Virus record (IMG/VR): IMGVR_UViG_3300048591_000147
Location: 1 to 64,000 of that record
Length of the DNA: 64,000 nucleotides
Reading direction: 5' to 3' (one strand)
The translations under genes and the position numbers were made by a program. This document shows positions 18,183-48,806 of the stretch, piece after piece; position 1 is the first letter of the stretch; every line of letters begins with the position of its first letter. The notes under the pieces are model-generated. The model did no database searches and had not been told where the DNA came from. It saw only the letters and a program-made list of their open reading frames with translations.

Positions 18183-19016
18183 ATGAACATATATTACACA
18201 TACATTTACTTAGATCCAAGAATAACTGGCATATGGGAAACAACGTTTGGAGTATTTAACTATGAACCATTCTACGTTGGTAAAGGAAAAGGGCAGCGAT
18301 ATTTAGTCCACCTTAAAGGTTGGGCATATAAGTATAAAAACCCACATTTATATAATAGAATAAGTAATATCAAGTCTGATGGGTTTGAGCCAATTGTAAT
18401 GATATTAAAAAACAACATATTACAAGAGGACGCATTAGCTATTGAGGCTAAATTAATAAATGAATTGGGCACTAGAAAGAATATATCACAAATAAAACTA
18501 GGACCGTTAGTAAATCTAAAATTGGACGGGAAGGTTCAGCGATTTTCAGATGAAACCAAACAAAAAATTAGTGAATCCGCACGAACAAGAAAGAGGAAAT
18601 CACATTCAGATGAAACCAAACAAAAAATGAGACTCGCGTCTGCGAATTTCACCGAAGAACAAAGAAAACAAAAATCAGAAAGAATAAGTAAGAAAATAAA
18701 AGGTAAAAAATTGTCAGAACAGCAATGTGAGCGCTTATCCCTATTACATAAAGGTAAAAAATTATCTGATGAACAAAAAGAGAAATTACGGATAACGTCT
18801 ACTGGCCGAAAACATTCTCCCGAATCGTTATTAAAGATGTCATTATGGCAAATTAAAAAATGGAAAATAGAAAATATAAATACTGGGATTTTTATAACGG
18901 ATAATCTAGCAGATTGGTGTAAATCTAACAATATAAATTATCATACACTCTATAATACATTAAAATCTCAAAAGTTTCACAAATTACATCGGTTGGTAGA
19001 AAAAGTGGCTGATTAG
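18183..19016 (+). CDS. GIY-YIG-family homing endonuclease with NUMOD3-like repeats
   Basis: YYTYIYLDPR..PFYVGKG..R; repeated HS.ETK.K / LS.EQK.K motifs. Confidence 0.85.
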   Translation: MNIYYTYIYLDPRITGIWETTFGVFNYEPFYVGKGKGQRYLVHLKGWAYKYKNPHLYNRISNIKSDGFEPIVMILKNNILQEDALAIEAKLINELGTRKNISQIKLGPLVNLKLDGKVQRFSDETKQKISESARTRKRKSHSDETKQKMRLASANFTEEQRKQKSERISKKIKGKKLSEQQCERLSLLHKGKKLSDEQKEKLRITSTGRKHSPESLLKMSLWQIKKWKIENINTGIFITDNLADWCKSNNINYHTLYNTLKSQKFHKLHRLVEKVAD

Positions 19017-19042: not shown

Positions 19043-19954
19043 TCAGAAGGGTGGTAGTTTTTTCAATAATTCTATATAATTGTCTTTTTGAGGGTCATTA
19101 TTTTTAACCCCATCAATCCACATAGTTACCATTTCTGGAGTTGGTGGCTCAGGTTCTGGTAATTTTTCTACAGGTTCCGCAAATGGATTATATGGACAGT
19201 AGAATGCACCAGCATCTGTTTCTATTTGACATTTATACATAATTGGACCATCAATATTTTTTCTAGGTTCTTTTCTACTGAACTTCTGTTCTAGTGCCAT
19301 AATCAGATCTGTCATGTTGGCTGCGTATAGGCCCGCCGCGTTGAGCGTGTTAATTTCGACGATCTTAATACCGTCTGGCGTTTCGCAAACATCTATCACG
19401 TATGCCTCATGTGGTTGCCAGTCTCTACGATAAGAACAGCACAGGTTGTAAACGAAATTGTCAAATCGTTTATCAACGTCAGATGAGTAATGCACCGTGC
19501 CTCCACGTTTATACATGGATTTCGTTACAATTTTTCTATCTACTATCCAGTACCTATACTCCGCGTAGATTTCTTTAACAGGGCATACTTGGATTAATGT
19601 ATCACCGTTCATAGAAGAACCATAGTCATCACCCATCGTGAGAATACTATGTTGCCAATCTGTAAGCTCTTGATCCGTAAAGACTTTTCCAGCAAATACC
19701 TTGGAATCTTCAATTGGACGAAGGAATGCCGTTCCTGTTACAATCTTGGCATCAGCAAATCTCGACACAACAGCATCAGCATTGAGCATATATGAGCCCC
19801 AATGCTTCATCTGCTCATTGAAATTGACTGGCTCTAGATCGAACACACCGGGATACCAACCTTTCTTTCTTGCAATATGACGCATGGAATAAGATCCCAT
19901 GCATATTACATTAAGTAATAAATAAGAAAAAAGATTCAGTCGAATGACAATCAT
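19043..19954 (-). CDS. ATP-grasp protein (DUF4343/R2K-like), possibly N-terminally truncated
   Basis: F.RP..DSK.FAG, EYRYWIVD, YVIDV..T..G.KIVEIN..AAG.YAA. Confidence 0.7.
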   Translation of the reverse strand: MIVIRLNLFSYLLLNVICMGSYSMRHIARKKGWYPGVFDLEPVNFNEQMKHWGSYMLNADAVVSRFADAKIVTGTAFLRPIEDSKVFAGKVFTDQELTDWQHSILTMGDDYGSSMNGDTLIQVCPVKEIYAEYRYWIVDRKIVTKSMYKRGGTVHYSSDVDKRFDNFVYNLCCSYRRDWQPHEAYVIDVCETPDGIKIVEINTLNAAGLYAANMTDLIMALEQKFSRKEPRKNIDGPIMYKCQIETDAGAFYCPYNPFAEPVEKLPEPEPPTPEMVTMWIDGVKNNDPQKDNYIELLKKLPPF

Positions 19955-20008
19955 GGGTTATCTCCTTATACGATAAAACCCCCATAACCGTCGATAAACT
20001 TACTGAAT
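19934..20008 (+). ncRNA. Y-RNA-like element A (minimal)
   Basis: ATTCAGT-CGAA...CTT-ACTGAAT terminal helix with bulged C; inner ATGGGTT/AAccCCCAT stem; TTATC. Confidence 0.65.
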
Positions 20009-20736
20009 TATATGTGTCTAGGTGCCAGAATGGTATTGGGTTGCGCTGCAAACGCAAATTGCGGGGGTTCGATTCCCTCCCTAGACTCCAAATCTTTAAC
20101 CTTGGCAATCCAGTTTTTAACTTTTTGCCTTTTCATACCCAAAAGGTTGGCGACTTTGGTCACCCAACCATATTTTGTAAAATCTATACCAGATTCGTTT
20201 AGTAATGTTATACGTTCTTGCTGTGATTTAAACCACTCGTTTAAGTGAGTCGCCAACCATTCTTTTCTTTCTTTCTTCTGCGGTTTGATTAATGCCGTTT
20301 TTTTATTTTTAGAACAGTAGTTGGTAGTCTGAGTATGACAATTTGGACACAGCAATCTAAGATTTTCAAATCTGTTATCATCATTTAGACCGTTGATATG
20401 ATCTAATTGTAAAGTTAATGGTAAATTATTATGCGTTCCGGTATTTGCGCATAATGCACACGAGTAATTTGTTAATTCAATAAACCTAGCTTTGACCCTT
20501 TTTCTAGGGACTTCGCAACCTGTAGTAAATAATTCATCATCTGTGTAGTATCTCTTTAAGGCGGTCATATCTCTGCATTTAAAATGTGAAATATCTAAAT
20601 TATATTGTTTTATATATTTGGATAAGGTTCTATAACCTCCACCAGACGTTGAGTTGCAACCCATTTTTGCAATTGCTTCTCTTTTACTTAAACTATTTTG
20701 AATTATTGATTTAATTTCTTCTGCTTTTGTTTCCAT
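20008..20736 (-). CDS. HNH homing endonuclease
   Basis: CALC..LQLDHINGLNDDNRFENLRLLCPNCH; own TATAAATA box in a hairpin at 20742..20787 (minus strand). Confidence 0.9.
   Translation of the reverse strand: METKAEEIKSIIQNSLSKREAIAKMGCNSTSGGGYRTLSKYIKQYNLDISHFKCRDMTALKRYYTDDELFTTGCEVPRKRVKARFIELTNYSCALCANTGTHNNLPLTLQLDHINGLNDDNRFENLRLLCPNCHTQTTNYCSKNKKTALIKPQKKERKEWLATHLNEWFKSQQERITLLNESGIDFTKYGWVTKVANLLGMKRQKVKNWIAKVKDLESREGIEPPQFAFAAQPNTILAPRHI
20016..20090 (+). tRNA. tRNA-Cys(GCA)
   Basis: Full cloverleaf: GTCTAGG/CCTAGAC, TTGCG-CTGCAAA-CGCAA, U73, encoded CCA. Confidence 0.92.
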
Positions 20737-20840
20737 GATTAGATGAACCCCTGTTGTTAATTGTATTTATAATAACTGTAGTTCATCCTCAAATTTGACA
20801 GATACGAATTGGTGTGTTAACATGCTTCACATGAGATCAG

Positions 20841-20868
20841 GGGAGTTCGACTCTCTCACGAGACTCCA
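20841..20868 (+). pseudogene. Orphan tRNA 3' half (T arm, acceptor 3' strand, CCA)
   Basis: GGGAG-TTCGACT-CTCTC-ACGAGAC-T-CCA with no matching 5' acceptor strand upstream. Confidence 0.5.
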
Positions 20869-20876
20869 AATAGAAT

Positions 20877-21010
20877 TACTAGTCGAATTGTAAAGGGTTA
20901 TCGCATTCGGAGCGGCTGATATTGGTTCGATTCCAGTGTGTTCCATACAGAGGGACACTAGCTTAATGGATAAAAGCAGCTAAAACATCCTTTCTTAATA
21001 CTTACTAGTA
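20877..21010 (+). ncRNA. Y-RNA-like element B with circularly permuted tRNA domain (YrlA-like)
   Basis: TACTAGT-CGAA...CTT-ACTAGTA; T arm ATTGG-TTCGATT-CCAGT, acceptor GTGTTCC/GGGACAC, then D arm GCTT..AAAGC. Confidence 0.8.
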
Positions 21011-21040
21011 TATTAATTTATGTCATAATGAGGAAGCAGC

Positions 21041-21988
21041 ATGGAATGTTACATGGTAGCAAGAAATCCATCAGGTGGAGATTATCTAGTCATGGATTAT
21101 TCATCCTTCGTTAGACAAGGTGGTAACGACCAATCATGGGGTAAGTGTTGGGTAACAATTTACGCTCGCTCCGCGAGTGAAGCTAGAGCTAAGGCATATC
21201 AATACTTATGAAAGTTAATATCAAATTAGAAATTGTCCCATTTACGGTGCCGGATGACGTTGCTTTAAAAGGACCACCAGCACTTAGACAAGATGGATTT
21301 AAACCATTGCAAAGATATCCGCTATCAGCCTTAGACTATGATAGTTTGTCAGAATTATGTTCTAACTTTAGAAAAGAAATTTTCAAAAAGGCTGGAATCA
21401 TTGATCAACAAAATCATAATCCGTATCGCAGTTATGATTCGAATGGTGATCTTGAGGGTGGAAAATGACAGACAGATTTCATAGTTTTACAGTGGTTTTA
21501 AAAGAACCGATTCGCGAAGATGACGCAGAAGCATTGATGAATGCCATTAAATGCTTGAAAGGTGTAATTGATGTAGCTGGTAATGTTGCGGATGCTAACG
21601 CATATGTGGCATACTCCAGAGCACGCAGCGAGCTTCGTGATAAATTATGGGATGCACTGAAATGACATCCACAATGGAAAGATTAAAAAAACATCTGGTA
21701 GCGGACAGGCAGAAGAGATTAGATGATCTAAGTGAACAAGATAATACGTTCTTTGATTTGACGAAAACTTCGGCTGAAAGATTTTTAAACAGAGTTAATG
21801 CGCAATTAGATCAAAGATGTCAAGTGATGGAAGCTATATTGCTTAGTCCAACATTTTCCAATGATGACAACAATCAGGAATATATTAACTGTAGCTTGTT
21901 GTTGGATAAGTATGAGAGTTTAATAAAACTTCTTCAACGAGATGATCTACTTGACATACTGGAAAAATGCGGTACAATAGAAGAATAA
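21041..21988 (+). CDS. Four small hypothetical proteins (21041..21211, 21208..21468, 21465..21665, 21647..21988)
   Basis: Overlapping start/stop codons. Confidence 0.55.
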
Positions 21989-21993
21989 AGAAT

Positions 21994-22153
21994 ATTGGTC
22001 GAACGATAAAAGGTTATCTCATTATCAGGGGCTGTAGGAAAGGTTCGAGTCCTTTCTCTTTTCACCAGAATGTAATTTGTGAAGATTATATCCATGTGAA
22101 AAGATGCGCTAGCGGCTGGCGGGCAAAAACATCTTTTTCATTAACTTACCAAT
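21994..22153 (+). ncRNA. Y-RNA-like element C with permuted tRNA domain
   Basis: ATTGGT-CGAA...CTT-ACCAAT; T arm AAAGG-TTCGAGT-CCTTT; acceptor-like TCTTTTCAC/GTGAAAAGA; upstream TTGACA..TACAAT promoter. Confidence 0.8.
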
Positions 22154-22215
22154 TAATTAACAAAGTAGTTGACAGCAAGAATAATACGCAGTAGAATGTA
22201 CTAAATAAAGAGAAC

Positions 22216-22375
22216 ATTGGTCGAACTATAAAAGGTTACCACGTAAAGGGGATGTAGGAATGGTTTAAGTCCATTCGCTTTCCACCAAAATGTAATTTGA
22301 GAAGATTGCATTTCTATGGAAAGCTAGGCGAGGGTCCAGCCGTCCAAAAAAGTCTTTTGTAATAAACTTACCAAT
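22216..22375 (+). ncRNA. Y-RNA-like element D (close paralog of C)
   Basis: ATTGGT-CGAA...CTT-ACCAAT; acceptor-like GCTTTCCA/TGGAAAGC; promoter TTGACA(22169)-17-TAGAAT. Confidence 0.8.
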
Positions 22376-22398
22376 TAATGTATAAATAGAATAAAAAT

Positions 22399-22511
22399 GT
22401 TGGTCGTTGATAGAAGTTTATCCGATAATCGTCCTAAGTAGAATGAAATAGTTCTGGATCTGGTAGATCTGATGATAAGAAAAATTACTTTTATTGTTAC
22501 ACCTTACCAAC
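22399..22511 (+). ncRNA. Y-RNA-like element E
   Basis: GTTGGT-CG...CTT-ACCAAC; TTTATC; preceded by TATAAATA at 22381. Confidence 0.65.
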
Positions 22512-22523
22512 GAAAATTAAAAT

Positions 22524-22661
22524 TGTTTAAGTCGAAAATGTAAAGGTTATCACAAACAGTCGTATGTGGGTTCGAGTCCCACCATTGCTGGAAGCAGTAA
22601 TAGTAGGCAAATTGGTTTAGCCAACCGTCAAAAACATCTTTCATTATTACTTACTTGAACA
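22524..22661 (+). ncRNA. Y-RNA-like element F with permuted tRNA domain
   Basis: TGTTTAAGT-CGAA...CTT-ACTTGAACA; T arm GTGGG-TTCGAGT-CCCAC; loop-closed acceptor ATTGCTG-GAAG-CAGTAAT; D arm GGC-AAATTGGTTTA-GCC. Confidence 0.8.
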
Positions 22662-22677
22662 TATAATTAGAATAAAA

Positions 22678-22785
22678 TTGTCAGTCGATTTGTAGAAGAT
22701 TATCTTTCGTGAAAAAGGAAATATGGGTTCGACTCCCATCTCGGGCTTGGTGCTATCAAACTCTTTTACTATAACTTATTGACAA
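22678..22785 (+). ncRNA. Y-RNA-like element G
   Basis: TTGTCAGT-CGA...CTT-ATTGACAA; T arm ATGGG-TTCGACT-CCCAT. Confidence 0.72.
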
Positions 22786-22800
22786 ACATATAAATAGAAT

Positions 22801-22881
22801 TTGTAGTCGATCTGCTAAGAATTATCTTTCAAATGGTGAAGTGGGCTAGGCCCATAATTTCTTGCTAATAACTTACTACAA
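22801..22881 (+). ncRNA. Y-RNA-like element H (minimal)
   Basis: TTGTAGT-CGA...CTT-ACTACAA; TTATC; preceded by TATAAATA at 22789. Confidence 0.7.
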
Positions 22882-22892
22882 TAATTTTGAAT

Positions 22893-23001
22893 TTATCAGT
22901 CGATAAATGATCATTATCACTCCGCCAAAACTTGGAGATTAGATGGTTCGAATCCATCACTAGCGTCGGTTCGCACTTGGTCGTTGACAACTTACTGGTA
23001 A
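22893..23001 (+). ncRNA. Y-RNA-like element I
   Basis: TTATCAGT-CGA...CTT-ACTGGTAA; T arm GATGG-TTCGAAT-CCATC. Confidence 0.72.
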
Positions 23002-23010
23002 TATATATTT

Positions 23011-23102
23011 GGATAGGTGTTCGAGCGGTTTAAGAAACTTGCCTTGAAAGCAAGAGATCCACCTAAAAACTGGGTCCGTGGGTTCGAATCCCACTCTATC
23101 CT
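23011..23102 (+). tRNA. tRNA-Ser(TGA)
   Basis: CTTGC-CTTGAAA-GCAAG, long variable arm, GTGGG-TTCGAAT-CCCAC; CCA not encoded. Confidence 0.88.
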
Positions 23103-23157
23103 CAGTTTTGTGTCCCCACATAAATAGATAAAGACTATTTAATGTGGGAACATAAGC

Positions 23158-23778
23158 ATGTATTATACGATATATCTAGTAACTAATACTATTAATGGTA
23201 ATGTTTACATAGGTAAACATCAAACGAATGATTTAAACGATGGCTATATGGGATCTGGTAAGATCCTTAAAAATGCCATTAAAAAATATGGACTTTGTAG
23301 TTTTCAAAAAACAATTTTACACATATTTGAAAACGAACAAGAGATGAATAAAAAAGAAGCAGAATTAGTAAATGAAGAGTTTATAGTACGAAAGGATACT
23401 TATAATATCTGTGTCGGTGGTTGTGGTGGATTTGGTTATATAAATAAAAATTTACCGAATGGTATGCTTGGTAAAAAGCAAACCGATTTCCAGAAACAAA
23501 GAGTGTCAGAGTGGCATGAGAAAAACAAACATCTTGTTGATAAAAACAAACACTCTGAAATGATTAAAAATGGATTGAAAAAAATGCTCAAACCTTCCGA
23601 TGGCTTTACAGGAAGGACACATACAGAAGATACCAAAAATAAAATGTGCAAGCCTAAAAATATTGGTGAAAGTAATTCACAGTTTGGTAGTATGTGGATA
23701 ACAGATGGTATAAATAGTATTAAAATAAAGAAGACAGATCTTATTCCAGAAGGATGGTATAAAGGTCGTAAAACGTGA
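23158..23778 (+). CDS. GIY-YIG homing endonuclease (Seg-like)
   Basis: TIYLVTNTING.VYIGKH..Y.GSG..LK.AIKKYG; upstream CATAAATA within hairpin 23111..23152. Confidence 0.9.
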   Translation: MYYTIYLVTNTINGNVYIGKHQTNDLNDGYMGSGKILKNAIKKYGLCSFQKTILHIFENEQEMNKKEAELVNEEFIVRKDTYNICVGGCGGFGYINKNLPNGMLGKKQTDFQKQRVSEWHEKNKHLVDKNKHSEMIKNGLKKMLKPSDGFTGRTHTEDTKNKMCKPKNIGESNSQFGSMWITDGINSIKIKKTDLIPEGWYKGRKT

Positions 23779-23966: not shown

Positions 23967-24094
23967 TCACAGTCGATTAATCTGGTTTACCTTGGAGAAA
24001 CGTCCGACCTAAAAATCGGGTGCGAGTCTGGTTCAAACCCGGACAAAATAGCGAAAGCTATGCTGTATAAAACCATTTTAGCAACTTATTGTGA
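23967..24094 (+). ncRNA. Y-RNA-like element J
   Basis: TCACAGT-CGA...CTT-ATTGTGA; TGGTTT/AAACCA stem; TTACC; T-arm-like GTCTGG-TTCAAAC-CCGGAC. Confidence 0.7.
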
Positions 24095-24102
24095 TTTATA
24101 AG

Positions 24103-24128
24103 AAAAGGCCAGCGAAAGCTGGCCTTTT
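24103..24128. terminator. Bidirectional Rho-independent terminator
   Basis: AAAAGGCCAGC-GAAA-GCTGGCCTTTT. Confidence 0.9.
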
Positions 24129-24137
24129 TGTTTGCGC

Positions 24138-35366: not shown

Positions 35367-35479
35367 TGGATCGTCACCCAGTGGACGAAGGTAGCGGGCT
35401 CTTAAAATACTTTTACGAGAGTATTTTGAAACCCGATTGCGAAAGCACAACGTGGGTTCGAATCCCACCGATCCAACCA
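35367..35479 (+). tRNA. Second copy of the long-V-arm tRNA-Lys, anticodon CTT, with a 26-nt hairpin insertion in the anticodon loop
   Basis: Identical to 34337..34423 outside the anticodon loop; insert 35403..35428. Confidence 0.85.
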
Positions 35480-48212: not shown

Positions 48213-48315
48213 GGGAACCTCGTATAAAGTGTGAGCAAGTGCATTAACCTCACATTTGGAATTATGGACAGCGTAATAACTGTCAGATTATGGTTCGAAT
48301 CCATGGGTCCCGCCA
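48213..48315 (+). ncRNA. tRNA-like RNA: acceptor stem, T arm and CCA with two non-canonical internal hairpins
   Basis: GGGAACC/GGGTCCC-G-CCA; ATGG-TTCGAAT-CCAT; TGTGAG/CTCACA; GACAG-8nt-CTGTC. Confidence 0.6.
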
Positions 48316-48335
48316 AAGTATAAATAAAGTAATAT

Positions 48336-48411
48336 GGGTTATTAGTGTAATCAGGCCGCACGCGAGTCTCCAAAACTCTTAGTCTGGGTTCAAATCCTAG
48401 ATAGCCCGCCA
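48336..48411 (+). tRNA. tRNA-Trp(CCA)
   Basis: GGGTTAT/ATAGCCC, CTCCAAA loop, G73, CCA. Confidence 0.88.
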
Positions 48412-48433
48412 TATAATGTAATAAAAGATAAGT

Positions 48434-48512
48434 GAGCGGTTGGCGGAACGGTAGACGCAGATGGCCTAAAAAACTGTCTCCTTAGTGGTTCGAATCCACT
48501 ACAGGCTCACCA
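48434..48512 (+). pseudogene. Degenerate Leu-like tRNA
   Basis: Leu-type D arm GCG-GAACGGTAGA-CGC, T arm and CCA, but 9-nt anticodon loop CCTAAAAAA, mismatched acceptor, no long V arm. Confidence 0.5.
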
Positions 48513-48531
48513 GAATAATGTAATAGTATAA

Positions 48532-48653
48532 TGGCATGTAGCTTAGAGGCAGAGCGAGTGACTGTGGAAGGAAACGTCAAGGCGTTGATCAGTTCGAATC
48601 TGATAACTTCAAAAGTAATCACTAGGTCGTAGGTTCGATCCCTACCTTGCCAG
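48532..48653 (+). tRNA. tRNA (Asn-like body) interrupted by a 50-nt structured insert in the anticodon loop
   Basis: AGTGA-CTGT[48566..48615]TAA-TCACT; G73; removing 50 nt gives a standard 72-nt tRNA-Asn(GTT). Confidence 0.8.
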
Positions 48654-48667
48654 CATAAAATTTAAAT

Positions 48668-48806
48668 GTCTCTTTGGCCGAGTGGACTATGGCAACAGGC
48701 TGTGGGTGTAAGAGTAAAGGCTCTGATCAGTTCGAATCTGAAATCACCGAAAGTAACCTGTCAGATGAAAATCTAATCACTGGTTCGAATCCAGTAGGGG
48801 ACTCCA
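48668..48806 (+). tRNA. Long-V-arm tRNA interrupted by a homologous 50-nt insert
   Basis: ACAGG-CTGT[48704..48753]TAA-CCTGT; 17-nt V arm; U73; CCA. Confidence 0.78.

What the first reader, a model, noticed from the sequence alone, without database searches (positions are those of the whole stretch)
20877..22661. Circularly permuted tRNA modules inside elements B, C, D and F, with variable cargo in the acceptor loop
Seen: inside the Y frame the order is T arm, acceptor 3' strand, loop, acceptor 5' strand, D arm, so the Ro helix replaces the anticodon stem. The acceptor 'end' is closed by about 7 nt (B), a GAAG tetraloop (F), or an extra hairpin TGTAATTT-GWGA-AGATTRYA (C and D, a recent duplicate pair). 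The permuted tRNA bodies differ from one another, suggesting independent capture of different tRNAs. Established: this topology is that of YrlA. Inference: a modular scaffold with an invariant protein-binding handle and swappable tRNA-mimic heads, possibly decoys for tRNA-elbow-binding or tRNA-cleaving defence proteins.
Basis: partly seen in the sequence, partly recalled or inferred. Interest (0 to 1): 0.75.

Follow-up and report, generated by a model that had tools for sequence, protein, structure and literature searches.

The report
Phage Y RNA array with tRNA-like heads
A 315-kb phage that encodes its own Ro60 protein carries eleven small RNA genes sharing one Ro60-type stem, and four of them (B, C, D, F) hold a circularly permuted tRNA body, so this is an unusually large and varied set of a known RNA class (YrlA-type Y RNAs), not a new kind of element.

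Summary
B (20877-21010), C (21994-22153), D (22216-22375) and F (22526-22659) each have a long bulged stem enclosing T arm, acceptor 3' strand, closing piece, acceptor 5' strand, then D arm.

They are four of eleven paralogues: ten lie at 19.9-24.1 kb and one at 86.6 kb. All share an invariant GU[C]GA/UUAC helix, a UUAYC motif and a covarying lower stem. The genome encodes a full-length Ro60, 125 kb away. A covariance model built from the array also finds untrained copies directly upstream of Ro60 genes in three other giant phages. The elements are therefore YrlA-type Y RNAs, although Rfam's YrlA model misses them.

- In B the stem does not replace the anticodon stem. B keeps an anticodon-arm homologue, and after re-permutation it is called tRNA-Arg(UCG).
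- C and D encode ACCA after a 7-bp acceptor stem, so their "cargo" hairpin looks like a tRNA-tRNA spacer.
- C and D are only 74% identical, so the duplication is not recent.

A tRNA origin ("capture") is supported for B only. The decoy idea was not tested. Overall this is a new variant of a known kind, of moderate interest.

The parts
20877..21010 (+). Element B: Y-type stem carrying a complete, circularly permuted tRNA-Arg-like body with five arms
   Evidence: Sequence. CM R1 77.1 bits. Re-permuted native sequence is called tRNA-Arg(UCG) at 112.9-117.6. Colinear at 76-78% with phage tRNA-Arg genes.
20877..20886 (+). B handle, 5' strand: 7-nt lower stem, bulged C at 20884, and G-A that pairs with U-U at 21002-21003
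   Evidence: Columns 3-12 of alignment A1. GU[C]GA is invariant in 17 sequences. Pairs 4-8 covary.
20898..20902 (+). UUAUC motif at the top of the stem (UUAYC is invariant in all 17 aligned elements)
   Evidence: The same motif is described in vertebrate Y RNAs and nematode sbRNAs (PMC4726728).
20902..20914 (+). B 'V' hairpin: 3-4 bp stem with 7-nt loop AUUCGGA. It is the homologue of an anticodon arm (U33, anticodon UCG, G37).
   Evidence: ARAGORN cloverleaf. Alignment with the Erwinia phage Kaldavass tRNA-Arg.
20921..20937 (+). B T arm (5 bp plus UUCGAUU)
20938..20958 (+). B acceptor stem, 7 bp, closed by AUACAGA. A at 20945 sits where the discriminator would be.
20959..20978 (+). B U8-A9, D arm (GCUU / AAUGGAUAA / AAGC) and A26
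20987..21010 (+). B handle, 3' strand, with the invariant CUUA at 21001-21004
21951..21978 (+). Sigma-70-like promoter (TTGACA-16-TACAAT, 11 of 12 positions) just upstream of C
   Evidence: This is a consensus match only.
21994..22153 (+). Element C: Y stem, short V hairpin (22018-22030), T arm (22038-22056), 7-bp acceptor (22057-22063 with 22098-22104), encoded ACCA (22064-22067), spacer hairpin (22070-22091), U8-G9 and D arm (22105-22121)
   Evidence: CM R1 69.9 bits.
22169..22197 (+). Sigma-70-like promoter (TTGACA-17-TAGAAT, 11 of 12 positions) upstream of D. It is homologous to the promoter that precedes F' in the related phage.
22216..22375 (+). Element D, paralogue of C: T arm 22258-22276 (loop UUUAAGU, with U at position 56), acceptor 22277-22283 with 22318-22324, encoded ACCA 22284-22287, spacer hairpin 22290-22311, U8-A9 and D arm 22325-22341
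   Evidence: CM R1 67.7 bits. Absent from the variant strains seen in sequencing runs.
22526..22659 (+). Element F: T arm 22566-22582, one extra C, acceptor-like stem 22584-22601 closed by GAAG, two extra nt, UA plus D arm 22604-22622
   Evidence: CM R1 73.4 bits. Orthologue F' is present in phage G001.
19934..20008 (+). Element A: same handle with a plain hairpin head, 7 nt upstream of tRNA-Cys (20016-20090)
22398..22512 (+). Element E: same handle (GUCG-U variant), head without a T arm
22679..22784 (+). Element G: handle, V hairpin, T arm (22723-22739). No acceptor stem or D arm.
22801..22881 (+). Element H: handle with two small hairpins
22894..23000 (+). Element I: handle, V hairpin, T arm (22942-22958), UA plus D-like arm (22961-22974), no acceptor stem. 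It lies 10 nt upstream of tRNA-Ser (23011-23103).
23967..24094 (+). Element J: handle, V hairpin, T arm (24026-24044), GAAA-capped hairpin (24048-24061)
24107..24133 (+). Intrinsic terminator (GGCCAGC-GAAA-GCUGGCC followed by a U run) that closes the array. The related phage has the same arrangement.
   Evidence: Sequence. The consensus scan did not list it.

Best explanation
B, C, D and F are genes for phage Y RNAs of the YrlA type. They belong to a family of eleven paralogues in this genome.

Anatomy (shown). Each RNA is a bulged stem of about 20 bp. Its base carries the invariant helix GU[C]GA/UUAC and its top carries UUAYC.

Binding (inferred). The stem is the docking site for the phage's own Ro60 protein (genome 146067-147656, minus strand).

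The head. The distal end of the stem carries a variable head. In B, C, D and F the head is a tRNA body in permuted order.
- Shown: the arms are present and carry the nucleotides that build the tRNA elbow (U8, A14, G18-G19, G53, U54-U55-C56, A58, C61). B and F also have an A15-U48 Levitt pair.
- Inferred: the head folds into an L shape and is handled by tRNA enzymes.

Expression.
- Shown: the genes sit in a tRNA operon. C and D have sigma-70-like promoters. A TAAATA motif is shared with the tRNA genes. A terminator follows J.
- Inferred: the 3' ends of A, I and K are made by RNase P cutting the tRNA that follows 6-10 nt downstream.
- Inferred: B, C and D have a 7-bp acceptor stem and a single-stranded leader, and C and D have an encoded ACCA. 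They are likely also cut at G1 (20952, 22098, 22318). That would give two-piece RNAs with a tRNA-like 3' end, as reported for M. smegmatis YrlA. F, closed by a tetraloop, would stay in one piece like Salmonella YrlA.

Function (inferred from the Rsr/Y RNA/PNPase complex and the Thermus phage phiLo work). Each Y RNA gates Ro60 or tethers it to a partner, and the different heads select different partners or substrates during infection. The most likely target is the tRNA or structured-RNA pool.

Origin (partly shown). The heads derive from tRNA genes. B is an Arg-type tRNA opened at position 26/27. C and D preserve a tRNA 3' end, spacer and tRNA 5' end.
For: - Handle. GUCG, UUA.C and CUUA are invariant in 17 sequences. 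The lower stem is fully paired at columns 4-9 with up to 5 pair types per column. Overall 92% of cells pair against 72.8% in shuffles (0/500) and 40-57% when slid.
- Ro60. A 529-aa ORF has TROVE and Ro60-vWA domains (E 1e-39 and 1e-49). It matches D. radiodurans Rsr and Xenopus/human Ro60 over its full length (E about 1e-100).
- Independent link between handle and Ro60. CM R1 finds untrained copies immediately upstream of, and on the same strand as, the Ro60 genes of G003 and G004, and within about 3 kb of the Ro60 gene of G002. In 650 kb of other loci it found only those same G003/G004 copies (L014, L058).
- The 5' GNCGAA motif and the V-T-AS-D order are those published for YrlA.
- tRNA-likeness of the heads.
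- Compensatory changes between orthologues and paralogues: F 2, G 2, H 1, I 3, K 1, C/D 5.
- The YrlA-like fold lies within 0.1-1.9 kcal/mol of the minimum free energy.
- Y elements sit 3-10 nt upstream of tRNA genes in four phage lineages.
- TAAATA lies within 25 nt upstream of 14 of 43 Y or tRNA starts, where about 0.65 would be expected.
- Contigs from rRNA-depleted wastewater metatranscriptomes cover B, C, F-J and tRNA-Ser. One contig ends at the 3' end of J. The same runs are not listed as holders of the adjacent 8.8 kb of coding DNA.
- The genome has a candidate CCA-adding enzyme and RNA ligase-domain ORFs.
Against: - Rfam's YrlA and Y_RNA models give no hit, even at E up to 10.
- The array is 125 kb from Ro60 and on the opposite strand, whereas published YrlA genes lie within 4 kb on the same strand. 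No Y element lies in the 1.5 kb upstream of this Ro60 gene.
- Folding z-scores are weak.
- D and F deviate from the cloverleaf. D has U at position 56. F has extra nucleotides at both junctions. C and D have 6-bp T stems.
- Nothing here shows binding or processing. The RNA-library contigs could derive from DNA and come from variant strains.
- Only one related genome was available for comparison.
Confidence: 0.7

Rival explanations
1. Decoy reading. The tRNA-like heads are baits that soak up host defence proteins which bind or cut tRNA. The stem serves only to stabilise them or to mark the cut bait for Ro60.
For: The phage invests heavily in tRNA supply and repair: 34 tRNAs, a candidate CCA-adding enzyme and RNA-ligase-domain ORFs. 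The number of heads differs between strains, as is usual for counter-defence genes: B-E are absent from G001, and D and E are absent from the variants seen in sequencing runs. B keeps an Arg-type anticodon loop.
Against: D and F have no recognisable anticodon loop and C's is degenerate, so at best B could bait anticodon nucleases. Four of the eleven elements (A, E, H, K) have no tRNA part at all yet keep the handle. This reading is compatible with, rather than exclusive of, the Ro60 scaffold reading.
Confidence: 0.12
2. Working permuted or split tRNA. B (perhaps also C and D) matures into a two-piece tRNA that is charged and used in translation. The stem merely holds the halves together.
For: Re-permuted B scores like the phage's real tRNAs. 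By my reading of its sequence it keeps A20, C35, G36 and A73, which established knowledge lists as E. coli ArgRS identity elements. The genome has no other tRNA-Arg(UCG). C and D encode ACCA. M. smegmatis YrlA is cut by RNase P and receives CCA in vivo (PMC4201824).
Against: A roughly 20-bp arm projecting from position 26/27 would probably clash with the ribosome. B's anticodon stem has only 3-4 pairs and A at position 32. The same handle is shared with elements that have no tRNA body. No bulge-helix-bulge motif of the kind used by permuted tRNA genes in algae is present. B is missing from the related phage.
Confidence: 0.06
3. Inert debris. The elements are decaying leftovers of tRNA genes scrambled by the homing endonucleases in this region.
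For: Two homing endonuclease genes (HNH 20008-20736, GIY-YIG 23158-23778) and a tRNA-Cys 3' remnant (20838-20872) lie inside the array. Element content varies between strains.
Against: The handle has invariant motifs and covarying pairs across 17 copies. Stems are kept by compensatory changes between two phages. The same handle sits next to Ro60 genes in unrelated giant phages. Promoters and a terminator frame the array.
Confidence: 0.07
4. Processing or regulatory punctuation. The stems are RNase or termination signals that shape the tRNA operon transcript. They have no life of their own as RNAs.
For: AU-rich spacers of 10-22 nt separate the elements from D through tRNA-Ser. Elements directly abut tRNA genes.
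Against: This does not explain the sequence-specific invariant helix, the UUAYC motif, the full tRNA-like heads or the linkage with Ro60 genes in other phages.
Confidence: 0.05

Closest known systems
YrlA-type bacterial and phage Y RNAs (Chen et al. 2014, PMC4201824; structure of the Salmonella YrlA tRNA-like domain, bioRxiv 10.1101/312249; Rfam RF02553)
   Same: A Ro60-binding stem holds both RNA ends. A GNCGA(A) motif lies near the 5' end. The order is V, T arm, acceptor-like stem-loop, D arm. The UA linker and T/D-loop nucleotides are conserved. The acceptor-like stem varies in length. Some members have a 7-bp stem that RNase P can cut. The host genome encodes Ro60.
   Different: - Not found by the Rfam model.
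- Eleven copies instead of one to a few.
- 125 kb from Ro60 and on the other strand, embedded in tRNA operons.
- Both strands of the Ro60-type helix and a UUAYC motif are conserved, whereas only the 5' strand is recognisable in Salmonella and Mycobacterium YrlA.
- Heads range from a full five-arm tRNA (B) to plain hairpins.
- C and D carry an encoded ACCA plus a spacer hairpin.
Vertebrate Y RNAs and nematode stem-bulge RNAs
   Same: The lower stem has a bulged C followed by G-U and A-U pairs (GGUC[C]GA/UUGACU in vertebrates, GU[C]GA/UUAC here). UUAUC lies at the start of the loop domain (PMC4726728). A related element next to Ro60 in contig G006 gives a weak Rfam hit to a nematode sbRNA family (26.5 bits, E 0.33).
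   Different: One C-G pair fewer next to the bulge. No Pol III terminator or oligo-U tail. No Rfam Y_RNA hit. The heads are tRNA-like. Shared descent as opposed to convergence cannot be decided here.
Yrl1 and Yrl2 of Thermus phage phiLo with phage Ro60 (PMC12135203)
   Same: A phage-encoded Ro60 together with phage-encoded Y-like RNAs that have a CGAA motif in a stem-bulge-stem. Binding to host PNPase has been shown for that system.
   Different: There the two RNAs lie directly upstream of Ro60, and no tRNA-like head is mentioned in the passages I read. phiLo Ro60 is only distantly similar to this Ro60 (E 1e-07).
Non-permuted tRNA/Y chimera next to Ro60 in giant phage contigs G003 and G004 (L127:579-701), found here
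   Same: It has the same five arms as B: acceptor, D arm, Y arm (the string GCUAAAACAUCC is identical to B), V hairpin with a 7-nt loop, and T arm.
   Different: Its ends are in the acceptor stem as in a normal tRNA, and the Y arm is capped by a GAACA loop. B is therefore its circular permutation. None is present in this genome.
Circularly permuted tRNA genes of the red alga Cyanidioschyzon merolae (recalled from established knowledge, not read here)
   Same: The 3' half of the tRNA is encoded upstream of the 5' half, with the acceptor ends joined by a short intervening sequence.
   Different: Those genes mature through a bulge-helix-bulge cut and circular intermediates into ordinary tRNAs. 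Here the ends lie in a long Ro60-type stem that is shared with non-tRNA elements.

Membership tests
YrlA-type Y RNA | Conserved GNCGAA(N0-1)G motif near the 5' end, in the strand of the Ro60-binding stem | tested here: met
   GUCGA is present in 10 of the 11 genomic elements. GUCGAA is present in A, B, C, D, F and K. The full motif with the trailing G is present in A, C and K only.
YrlA-type Y RNA | Order: stem 5' strand, V, T arm, acceptor-like stem-loop, D arm, stem 3' strand, with tRNA-type tertiary nucleotides | tested here: met
   Met for B, C, D and F. The Levitt pair A15-U48 is present in B and F but not evident in C and D. G, I and J are partial.
YrlA-type Y RNA | Score at or above the Rfam RF02553 gathering threshold (69 bits) | tested here: not met
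   No hit in the region at E up to 10, and none in the genome at E up to 0.001. This shows the model does not reach these sequences. It does not show a different architecture.
YrlA-type Y RNA | Encoded within about 4 kb of the Ro60 gene, on the same strand | tested here: not met
   The array is on the plus strand at 19.9-24.1 kb. Ro60 is on the minus strand at 146.1-147.7 kb. No Y element lies in the 1.5 kb upstream of Ro60. Copies of the same handle do meet this criterion in G002, G003 and G004.
YrlA-type Y RNA | Ro60 orthologue encoded in the same genome | tested here: met
   TROVE plus Ro60-vWA domains, 529 aa.
YrlA-type Y RNA | Physical binding to Ro60/Rsr, and tRNA-type modifications (D, T54, pseudouridine 55) | not testable with these tools
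   The complex-prediction job with RNA was not folded.
Metazoan Y RNA / sbRNA | Lower-stem helix with bulged C, UUAUC at the loop entry, and a match to the Rfam Y_RNA model | tested here: inconclusive
   The helix and UUAYC are present. There is no Rfam Y_RNA or sbRNA hit for the window's elements.
Canonical tRNA gene | Contiguous cloverleaf recognised by ARAGORN or Rfam RF00005 (29 bits) | tested here: not met
   No ARAGORN call at B, C, D or F. The best Rfam tRNA score is 22.5 bits at 20873-20945.
Circularly permuted tRNA | After re-joining the acceptor ends and opening elsewhere, native sequence alone gives a full cloverleaf | tested here: met
   Met for B only: tRNA-Arg(UCG), 112.9-117.6. 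C is marginal (40 of 72 constructs, about 106). D and F fail.
Circularly permuted tRNA (algal type) | Bulge-helix-bulge motif at the junction of the transcript ends | tested here: not met
   The junction is a 7-bp stem, a 1-nt C bulge and G-U/A-U pairs. This is not a 3-4-3 bulge-helix-bulge.

The most novel reading that the evidence does not exclude
B, and its non-permuted twin next to Ro60 in other giant phages, is a five-armed tRNA-Arg that still works as a tRNA substrate. RNase P and CCA addition would turn it into a two-piece RNA with a free acceptor end and an Arg anticodon loop, held on Ro60 by its extra arm. It could then be charged. Alternatively it could be cut by an Arg-specific anticodon nuclease while docked on Ro60, giving the phage a tethered sensor or bait for attacks on tRNA, coupled directly to RNA decay or repair. 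More broadly, the array would be a living record of how Y RNAs are made from tandem tRNA genes.
Probability: 0.12. Interest if true: 0.85.

Novelty: new variant of a known kind. Interest (0 to 1): 0.58.

Why it matters
Y RNAs with tRNA-like domains have been known in bacteria and some phages since 2014, but the partner of the tRNA-like domain and the origin of these RNAs are still open questions. This locus helps in four ways.

1. It offers eleven natural variants of one scaffold in one genome, from a plain hairpin to a complete tRNA. That is a ready-made series for asking what the head recruits.

2. It bears on the proposal that YrlA arose from tandem tRNAs. B is an Arg-type tRNA opened at position 26/27. 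C and D keep an ACCA-spacer-leader junction. Other giant phages hold the non-permuted form next to Ro60.

3. It shows that the current Rfam model and the 'within 4 kb of Ro60' rule miss such genes, so Y RNAs in large phages are probably under-counted.

4. It places Ro60 and Y RNAs inside the tRNA economy of a giant phage, which can be tested against tRNA-targeting host defences.

Tried and rejected
- Naive circularisation, keeping all linkers and closing the stem with a 7-nt loop, then ARAGORN: nothing was called for any element. The linkers between the stem and the D or T arms are too long for a four-arm cloverleaf.
- ARAGORN with a synthetic anticodon arm calls almost every construct, but also 14-55 of 96 shuffled controls. 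Only the scores compared with shuffles were used.
- Rfam at gathering and at E up to 10: no Y_RNA, YrlA or sbRNA hit in the window. No RF02553 hit in the genome.
- Donor search among the phage's own 34 tRNAs: no close copy. BLAST of re-permuted C against phages gave no match. Re-permuted F gave only a marginal tRNA-Leu hit (E 0.2).
- Search for more relatives. Handle patterns in viral contigs found one related phage, G001. The cargo-hairpin pattern gave a chance match, L133. Two metagenome scans gave nothing, or the same phage as G001.
- Folding energy alone: z-scores from -0.7 to -2.6, not decisive.
- Complex prediction with Ro60 plus element H: not folded and no verdict. This is no evidence either way.
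- Expression. No silent control stretch could be laid, so transcription is suggested but not shown.
- GOLLD RNA, found in the relative, was sought in this genome and not found. The control genomes did not ring either.
- RtcB: absent.
- Supplementary tables of PMC4201824 and two reviews (PMC10870794, PMC6047535) are not held. I therefore could not check how many Y RNAs per phage were reported before.
Full report
**Where the window lies.** The window is the first 64 kb of a complete 314,956-bp virus record with terminal repeats. It is AT-rich and has 34 tRNA genes. The finding covers 20877-22661.

**What is in the sequence.** Between 19.9 and 24.1 kb there are ten elements that begin with (R)GUCGA ... 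UUAYC and end with CUUAY. An eleventh lies at 86.6 kb.

| Element | Coordinates |
|---|---|
| A | 19934-20008 |
| B | 20877-21010 |
| C | 21994-22153 |
| D | 22216-22375 |
| E | 22398-22512 |
| F | 22526-22659 |
| G | 22679-22784 |
| H | 22801-22881 |
| I | 22894-23000 |
| J | 23967-24094 |
| K | genome 86606-86668 |

**The shared stem.** I aligned these eleven with six orthologues from a related phage. GUCG, UUA.C and CUUA are invariant. The 5' and 3' ends pair as follows:
- a 7-bp lower stem;
- then a bulged C;
- then invariant G-U and A-U pairs;
- then an internal loop;
- then a 6-8-bp upper stem that ends just before UUAYC.

Columns 4-8 of the lower stem are paired in all 17 sequences, with two to five pair types each. 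Over the whole stem, 92% of cells pair. Shuffles give 72.8 +/- 1.9% (0 of 500 reach the observed value). Sliding the partners gives 40-57%. The stem is therefore a selected structure with a sequence-specific core.

**The four tRNA-like heads.**
- The closing pieces are as described: AUACAGA in B, GAAG in F, and the hairpin UGUAAUUU-GWGA-AGAUURYA in C and D.
- The T-loop motif occurs 20 times in the window against 3.0 +/- 1.8 expected. Six of these are in array elements B, C, F, G, I and J.
  - Naive circularisation is not recognised.
  - With a synthetic anticodon arm, the modules score 124.9 (B), 116.9 (C), 106.1 (D) and 118.6 (F). The phage's own tRNAs score about 101-123. D-arm shuffles reach these values in 0, 5, 13 and 0 of 300 trials.
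  - With native nucleotides only and default thresholds, B is called tRNA-Arg(UCG) at 112.9-117.6. C is marginal. D and F fail.
- Folding energies alone are unremarkable, with z from -0.7 to -2.6. The YrlA-like fold lies within 0.1-1.9 kcal/mol of the minimum.
- Stems are kept by compensatory changes: five between C and D, and one to three in each of F, G, H, I and K between the two phages.

1. *B keeps an anticodon arm.* B contains a small hairpin (20902-20914, loop AUUCGGA) between the stem and the T arm.
   - Re-permuted B is colinear over positions 8-62 (D arm, this hairpin, variable loop, T arm) with annotated tRNA-Arg genes of large Erwinia and Serratia phages. Identity is 76-78% and E is 0.01-0.6.
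   - Most of that identity lies in the D arm and the variable loop/T arm; the hairpin itself matches only 9 of 17 positions.
   - ARAGORN reads an Arg anticodon in the hairpin.
   - The hairpin is thus the homologue of an anticodon arm, and the Y stem is inserted at position 26/27 instead of replacing the anticodon stem.
   - It occupies the place of the 'V' arm of published YrlA RNAs.

2. *C and D encode ACCA.* Both have a 7-bp acceptor stem followed by an encoded ACCA (22064-22067 and 22284-22287). Their 'cargo' hairpin lies between that CCA and a short leader before G1. This is the layout of the junction between two tandem tRNA genes.

3. *C and D are not a recent pair.* They are 74% identical. 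D and E are missing from variant strains seen in sequencing runs, and B-E are missing from the related phage.

**Why these are Y RNAs.**
- The genome encodes a 529-aa protein with TROVE and Ro60-vWA domains. It matches D. radiodurans Rsr and Xenopus/human Ro60 over its whole length at E about 1e-100.
- The 5' motif is the GNCGAA described for YrlA, and the order V-T-AS-D is the YrlA order (PMC4201824; bioRxiv 10.1101/312249).
- The helix resembles the vertebrate Ro60 site: a bulged C followed by G-U and A-U. [quoted passage not shown]
- The strongest independent evidence comes from a covariance model built from the 17 sequences (R1).
  - It recovers all copies in this genome and in the relative.
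  - It also finds untrained copies in three other giant phage contigs. In G003 and G004 these lie immediately upstream of the Ro60 gene on the same strand. In G002 they lie within about 3 kb of the Ro60 gene, across the junction of the circular map.
  - In 650 kb of loci picked by a loose pattern, the model hit only those same Ro60-adjacent G003/G004 copies (L014, L058).

**What speaks against simple membership.** Rfam's YrlA and Y_RNA models do not reach these sequences. The array is 125 kb from Ro60 on the other strand, and no Y element lies in the 1.5 kb upstream of this Ro60 gene.

**Setting and expression.**
- The array is part of a tRNA operon. A, I and K end 6-10 nt before tRNA-Cys, tRNA-Ser and tRNA-Glu.
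- In G002 and G004 the untrained copies end 3-5 nt before tRNA genes. RNase P cleavage of the downstream tRNA would therefore make the 3' end of these Y RNAs. This is inferred.
- Sigma-70-like promoters (11 of 12 positions) precede C and D. A terminator follows J.
- TAAATA lies within 25 nt upstream of 14 of 43 Y or tRNA starts, against about 0.65 expected.
- An HNH gene (20008-20736, minus strand) and a GIY-YIG gene (23158-23778) interrupt the array. Both are absent from the relative and from variant contigs.
- Contigs from two rRNA-depleted wastewater metatranscriptome studies cover B, C, F, G, H, I, tRNA-Ser and J. One contig runs from the start of I to the last base of J. Those runs are not listed as holders of the adjacent 8.8 kb of coding DNA. 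This suggests stable transcripts but does not prove them. Only contigs were available, they come from variant strains, and DNA runs also hold the array more widely than its flank.

**A useful comparator found on the way.** Next to Ro60 in G003 and G004 lies a 123-nt gene that Rfam scores as a tRNA (39.6 bits) with a 50-nt insertion.
- It reads, in order: acceptor 5' strand, D arm, Y 3' strand, GAACA loop, Y 5' strand (GGUCGAA ... GGGUUAUC), V hairpin, T arm, acceptor 3' strand.
- It has the same five arms as B, but its ends are in the acceptor stem. B is its circular permutation.
- Two such genes in tandem, read from the middle of one to the middle of the next, would give exactly the B/C/D layout, including a CCA-spacer-leader junction. 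This fits the tandem-tRNA origin proposed for YrlA.
- No such gene is present in this genome.

**How it most likely works.** I take the elements to be Ro60-binding Y RNAs with exchangeable heads.
- Shown: the conserved handle, the tRNA-like heads, the Ro60 gene, and the tRNA-operon setting.
- Inferred: binding to Ro60, L-shaped folding, processing by RNase P and CCA addition for B, C and D (by analogy with M. smegmatis YrlA), and a role in gating Ro60 or tethering it to partners. Partners could include PNPase, as shown for D. radiodurans and Salmonella and for Thermus phage phiLo.
- The phage also has a candidate CCA-adding enzyme and RNA-ligase-domain ORFs but no RtcB. This fits a link with tRNA upkeep during infection.
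- The decoy idea, a working split tRNA-Arg, inert debris and mere processing signals are kept as rivals with lower weight.

**Verdict.** The identification as YrlA-type Y RNAs is well supported, although two formal membership criteria fail (the Rfam score and proximity to Ro60). New here are:
- the size and diversity of the family in one phage;
- its location in tRNA operons far from Ro60;
- the complete Arg-type tRNA in B;
- the ACCA-spacer junctions in C and D;
- the existence of the non-permuted form in other giant phages.

I rate it a new variant of a known kind, of moderate interest.

Noticed in passing
window 20008-20872: An HNH homing endonuclease gene (20008-20736, minus strand) lies between an intact tRNA-Cys (20016-20090) and a 3' remnant of a different tRNA-Cys (about 20838-20872). 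That remnant matches the single tRNA-Cys of the related phage. This looks like endonuclease-linked replacement of a tRNA gene. The ORF as listed overlaps the new tRNA on the opposite strand.
   Followed up: partly
window 23158-23778: A SegE-like GIY-YIG homing endonuclease gene is inserted between tRNA-Ser and element J. It is absent from the related phage and from variant contigs in RNA and DNA runs, which show joints at 23103/23105 to 23956/23964. A further GIY-YIG gene lies at 18183-19016.
   Followed up: partly
L127:579-701 (G004) and L128:374-496 (G003), next to their Ro60 genes: A non-permuted chimera: a tRNA-shaped gene with a Y-RNA arm (capped by GAACA) inserted between the D arm and an anticodon-like hairpin. 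Rfam scores it as a tRNA at 39.6 bits. I found no description of such a gene in the papers searched.
   Followed up: partly
window 48213-48805 and 35367-35476: A cluster of odd tRNA genes. Rfam calls 48532-48653 (122 nt) and 35367-35476 (110 nt) as tRNAs with insertions of about 35-50 nt that ARAGORN misses. Further T-arm motifs at 48292, 48487 and 48782 belong to tRNA-like genes that neither tool called. Two of the insertions contain the same T-arm-like hairpin (GAUCAGUUCGAAUCUGA).
   Followed up: no
L129:2223-2670 (related phage G001, about 97.7-98.2 kb): A GOLLD RNA (Rfam RF02032, 198 bits, E 2e-54) sits in the tRNA cluster of the related phage, close to its copy of element K. None was found in this genome, though the search's controls did not ring.
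   Followed up: partly
L125:3550-3799 (giant phage contig G002): A partial match to bacterial RNase P RNA class A (53 bits, below the gathering score of 100, E 1.6e-13) lies inside a phage tRNA array that has more than 30 tRNAs and several Y-like elements.
   Followed up: no
genome-wide; for example window 19919, 22202, 22383, 22791, 33031, 34307, 48321: TAAATA (often inside TATAAATAGAAT) lies within 25 nt upstream of 14 of 43 Y-RNA or tRNA starts, against about 0.65 expected. It may be a promoter shared by the small-RNA genes (it resembles the T4 late-promoter core) or a processing signal.
   Followed up: partly
L006, L026, L028, L036, L040, L062, L072, L096, L102, L104 (short viral contigs of about 1-4 kb, several of them from metatranscriptomes): These contigs share GUCGAA ... 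GAAGGGUUAUCG followed by a perfect hairpin, the same words as the Y-RNA 5' strand. The handle model R1 does not match them. They are probably unrelated, but the recurrence is unexplained.
   Followed up: no
genome 76266-76343 and 87001-87076 (outside the window): ARAGORN calls a tRNA with anticodon CUA, which would read the amber stop codon, and a tRNA with a two-base anticodon loop call. I did not check whether the phage uses amber codons in its genes.
   Followed up: no
window 19043-19954 (minus strand): An R2K-clade ATP-grasp protein gene (Pfam R2K_3, E 1e-15) lies directly upstream of element A on the opposite strand.
   Followed up: no
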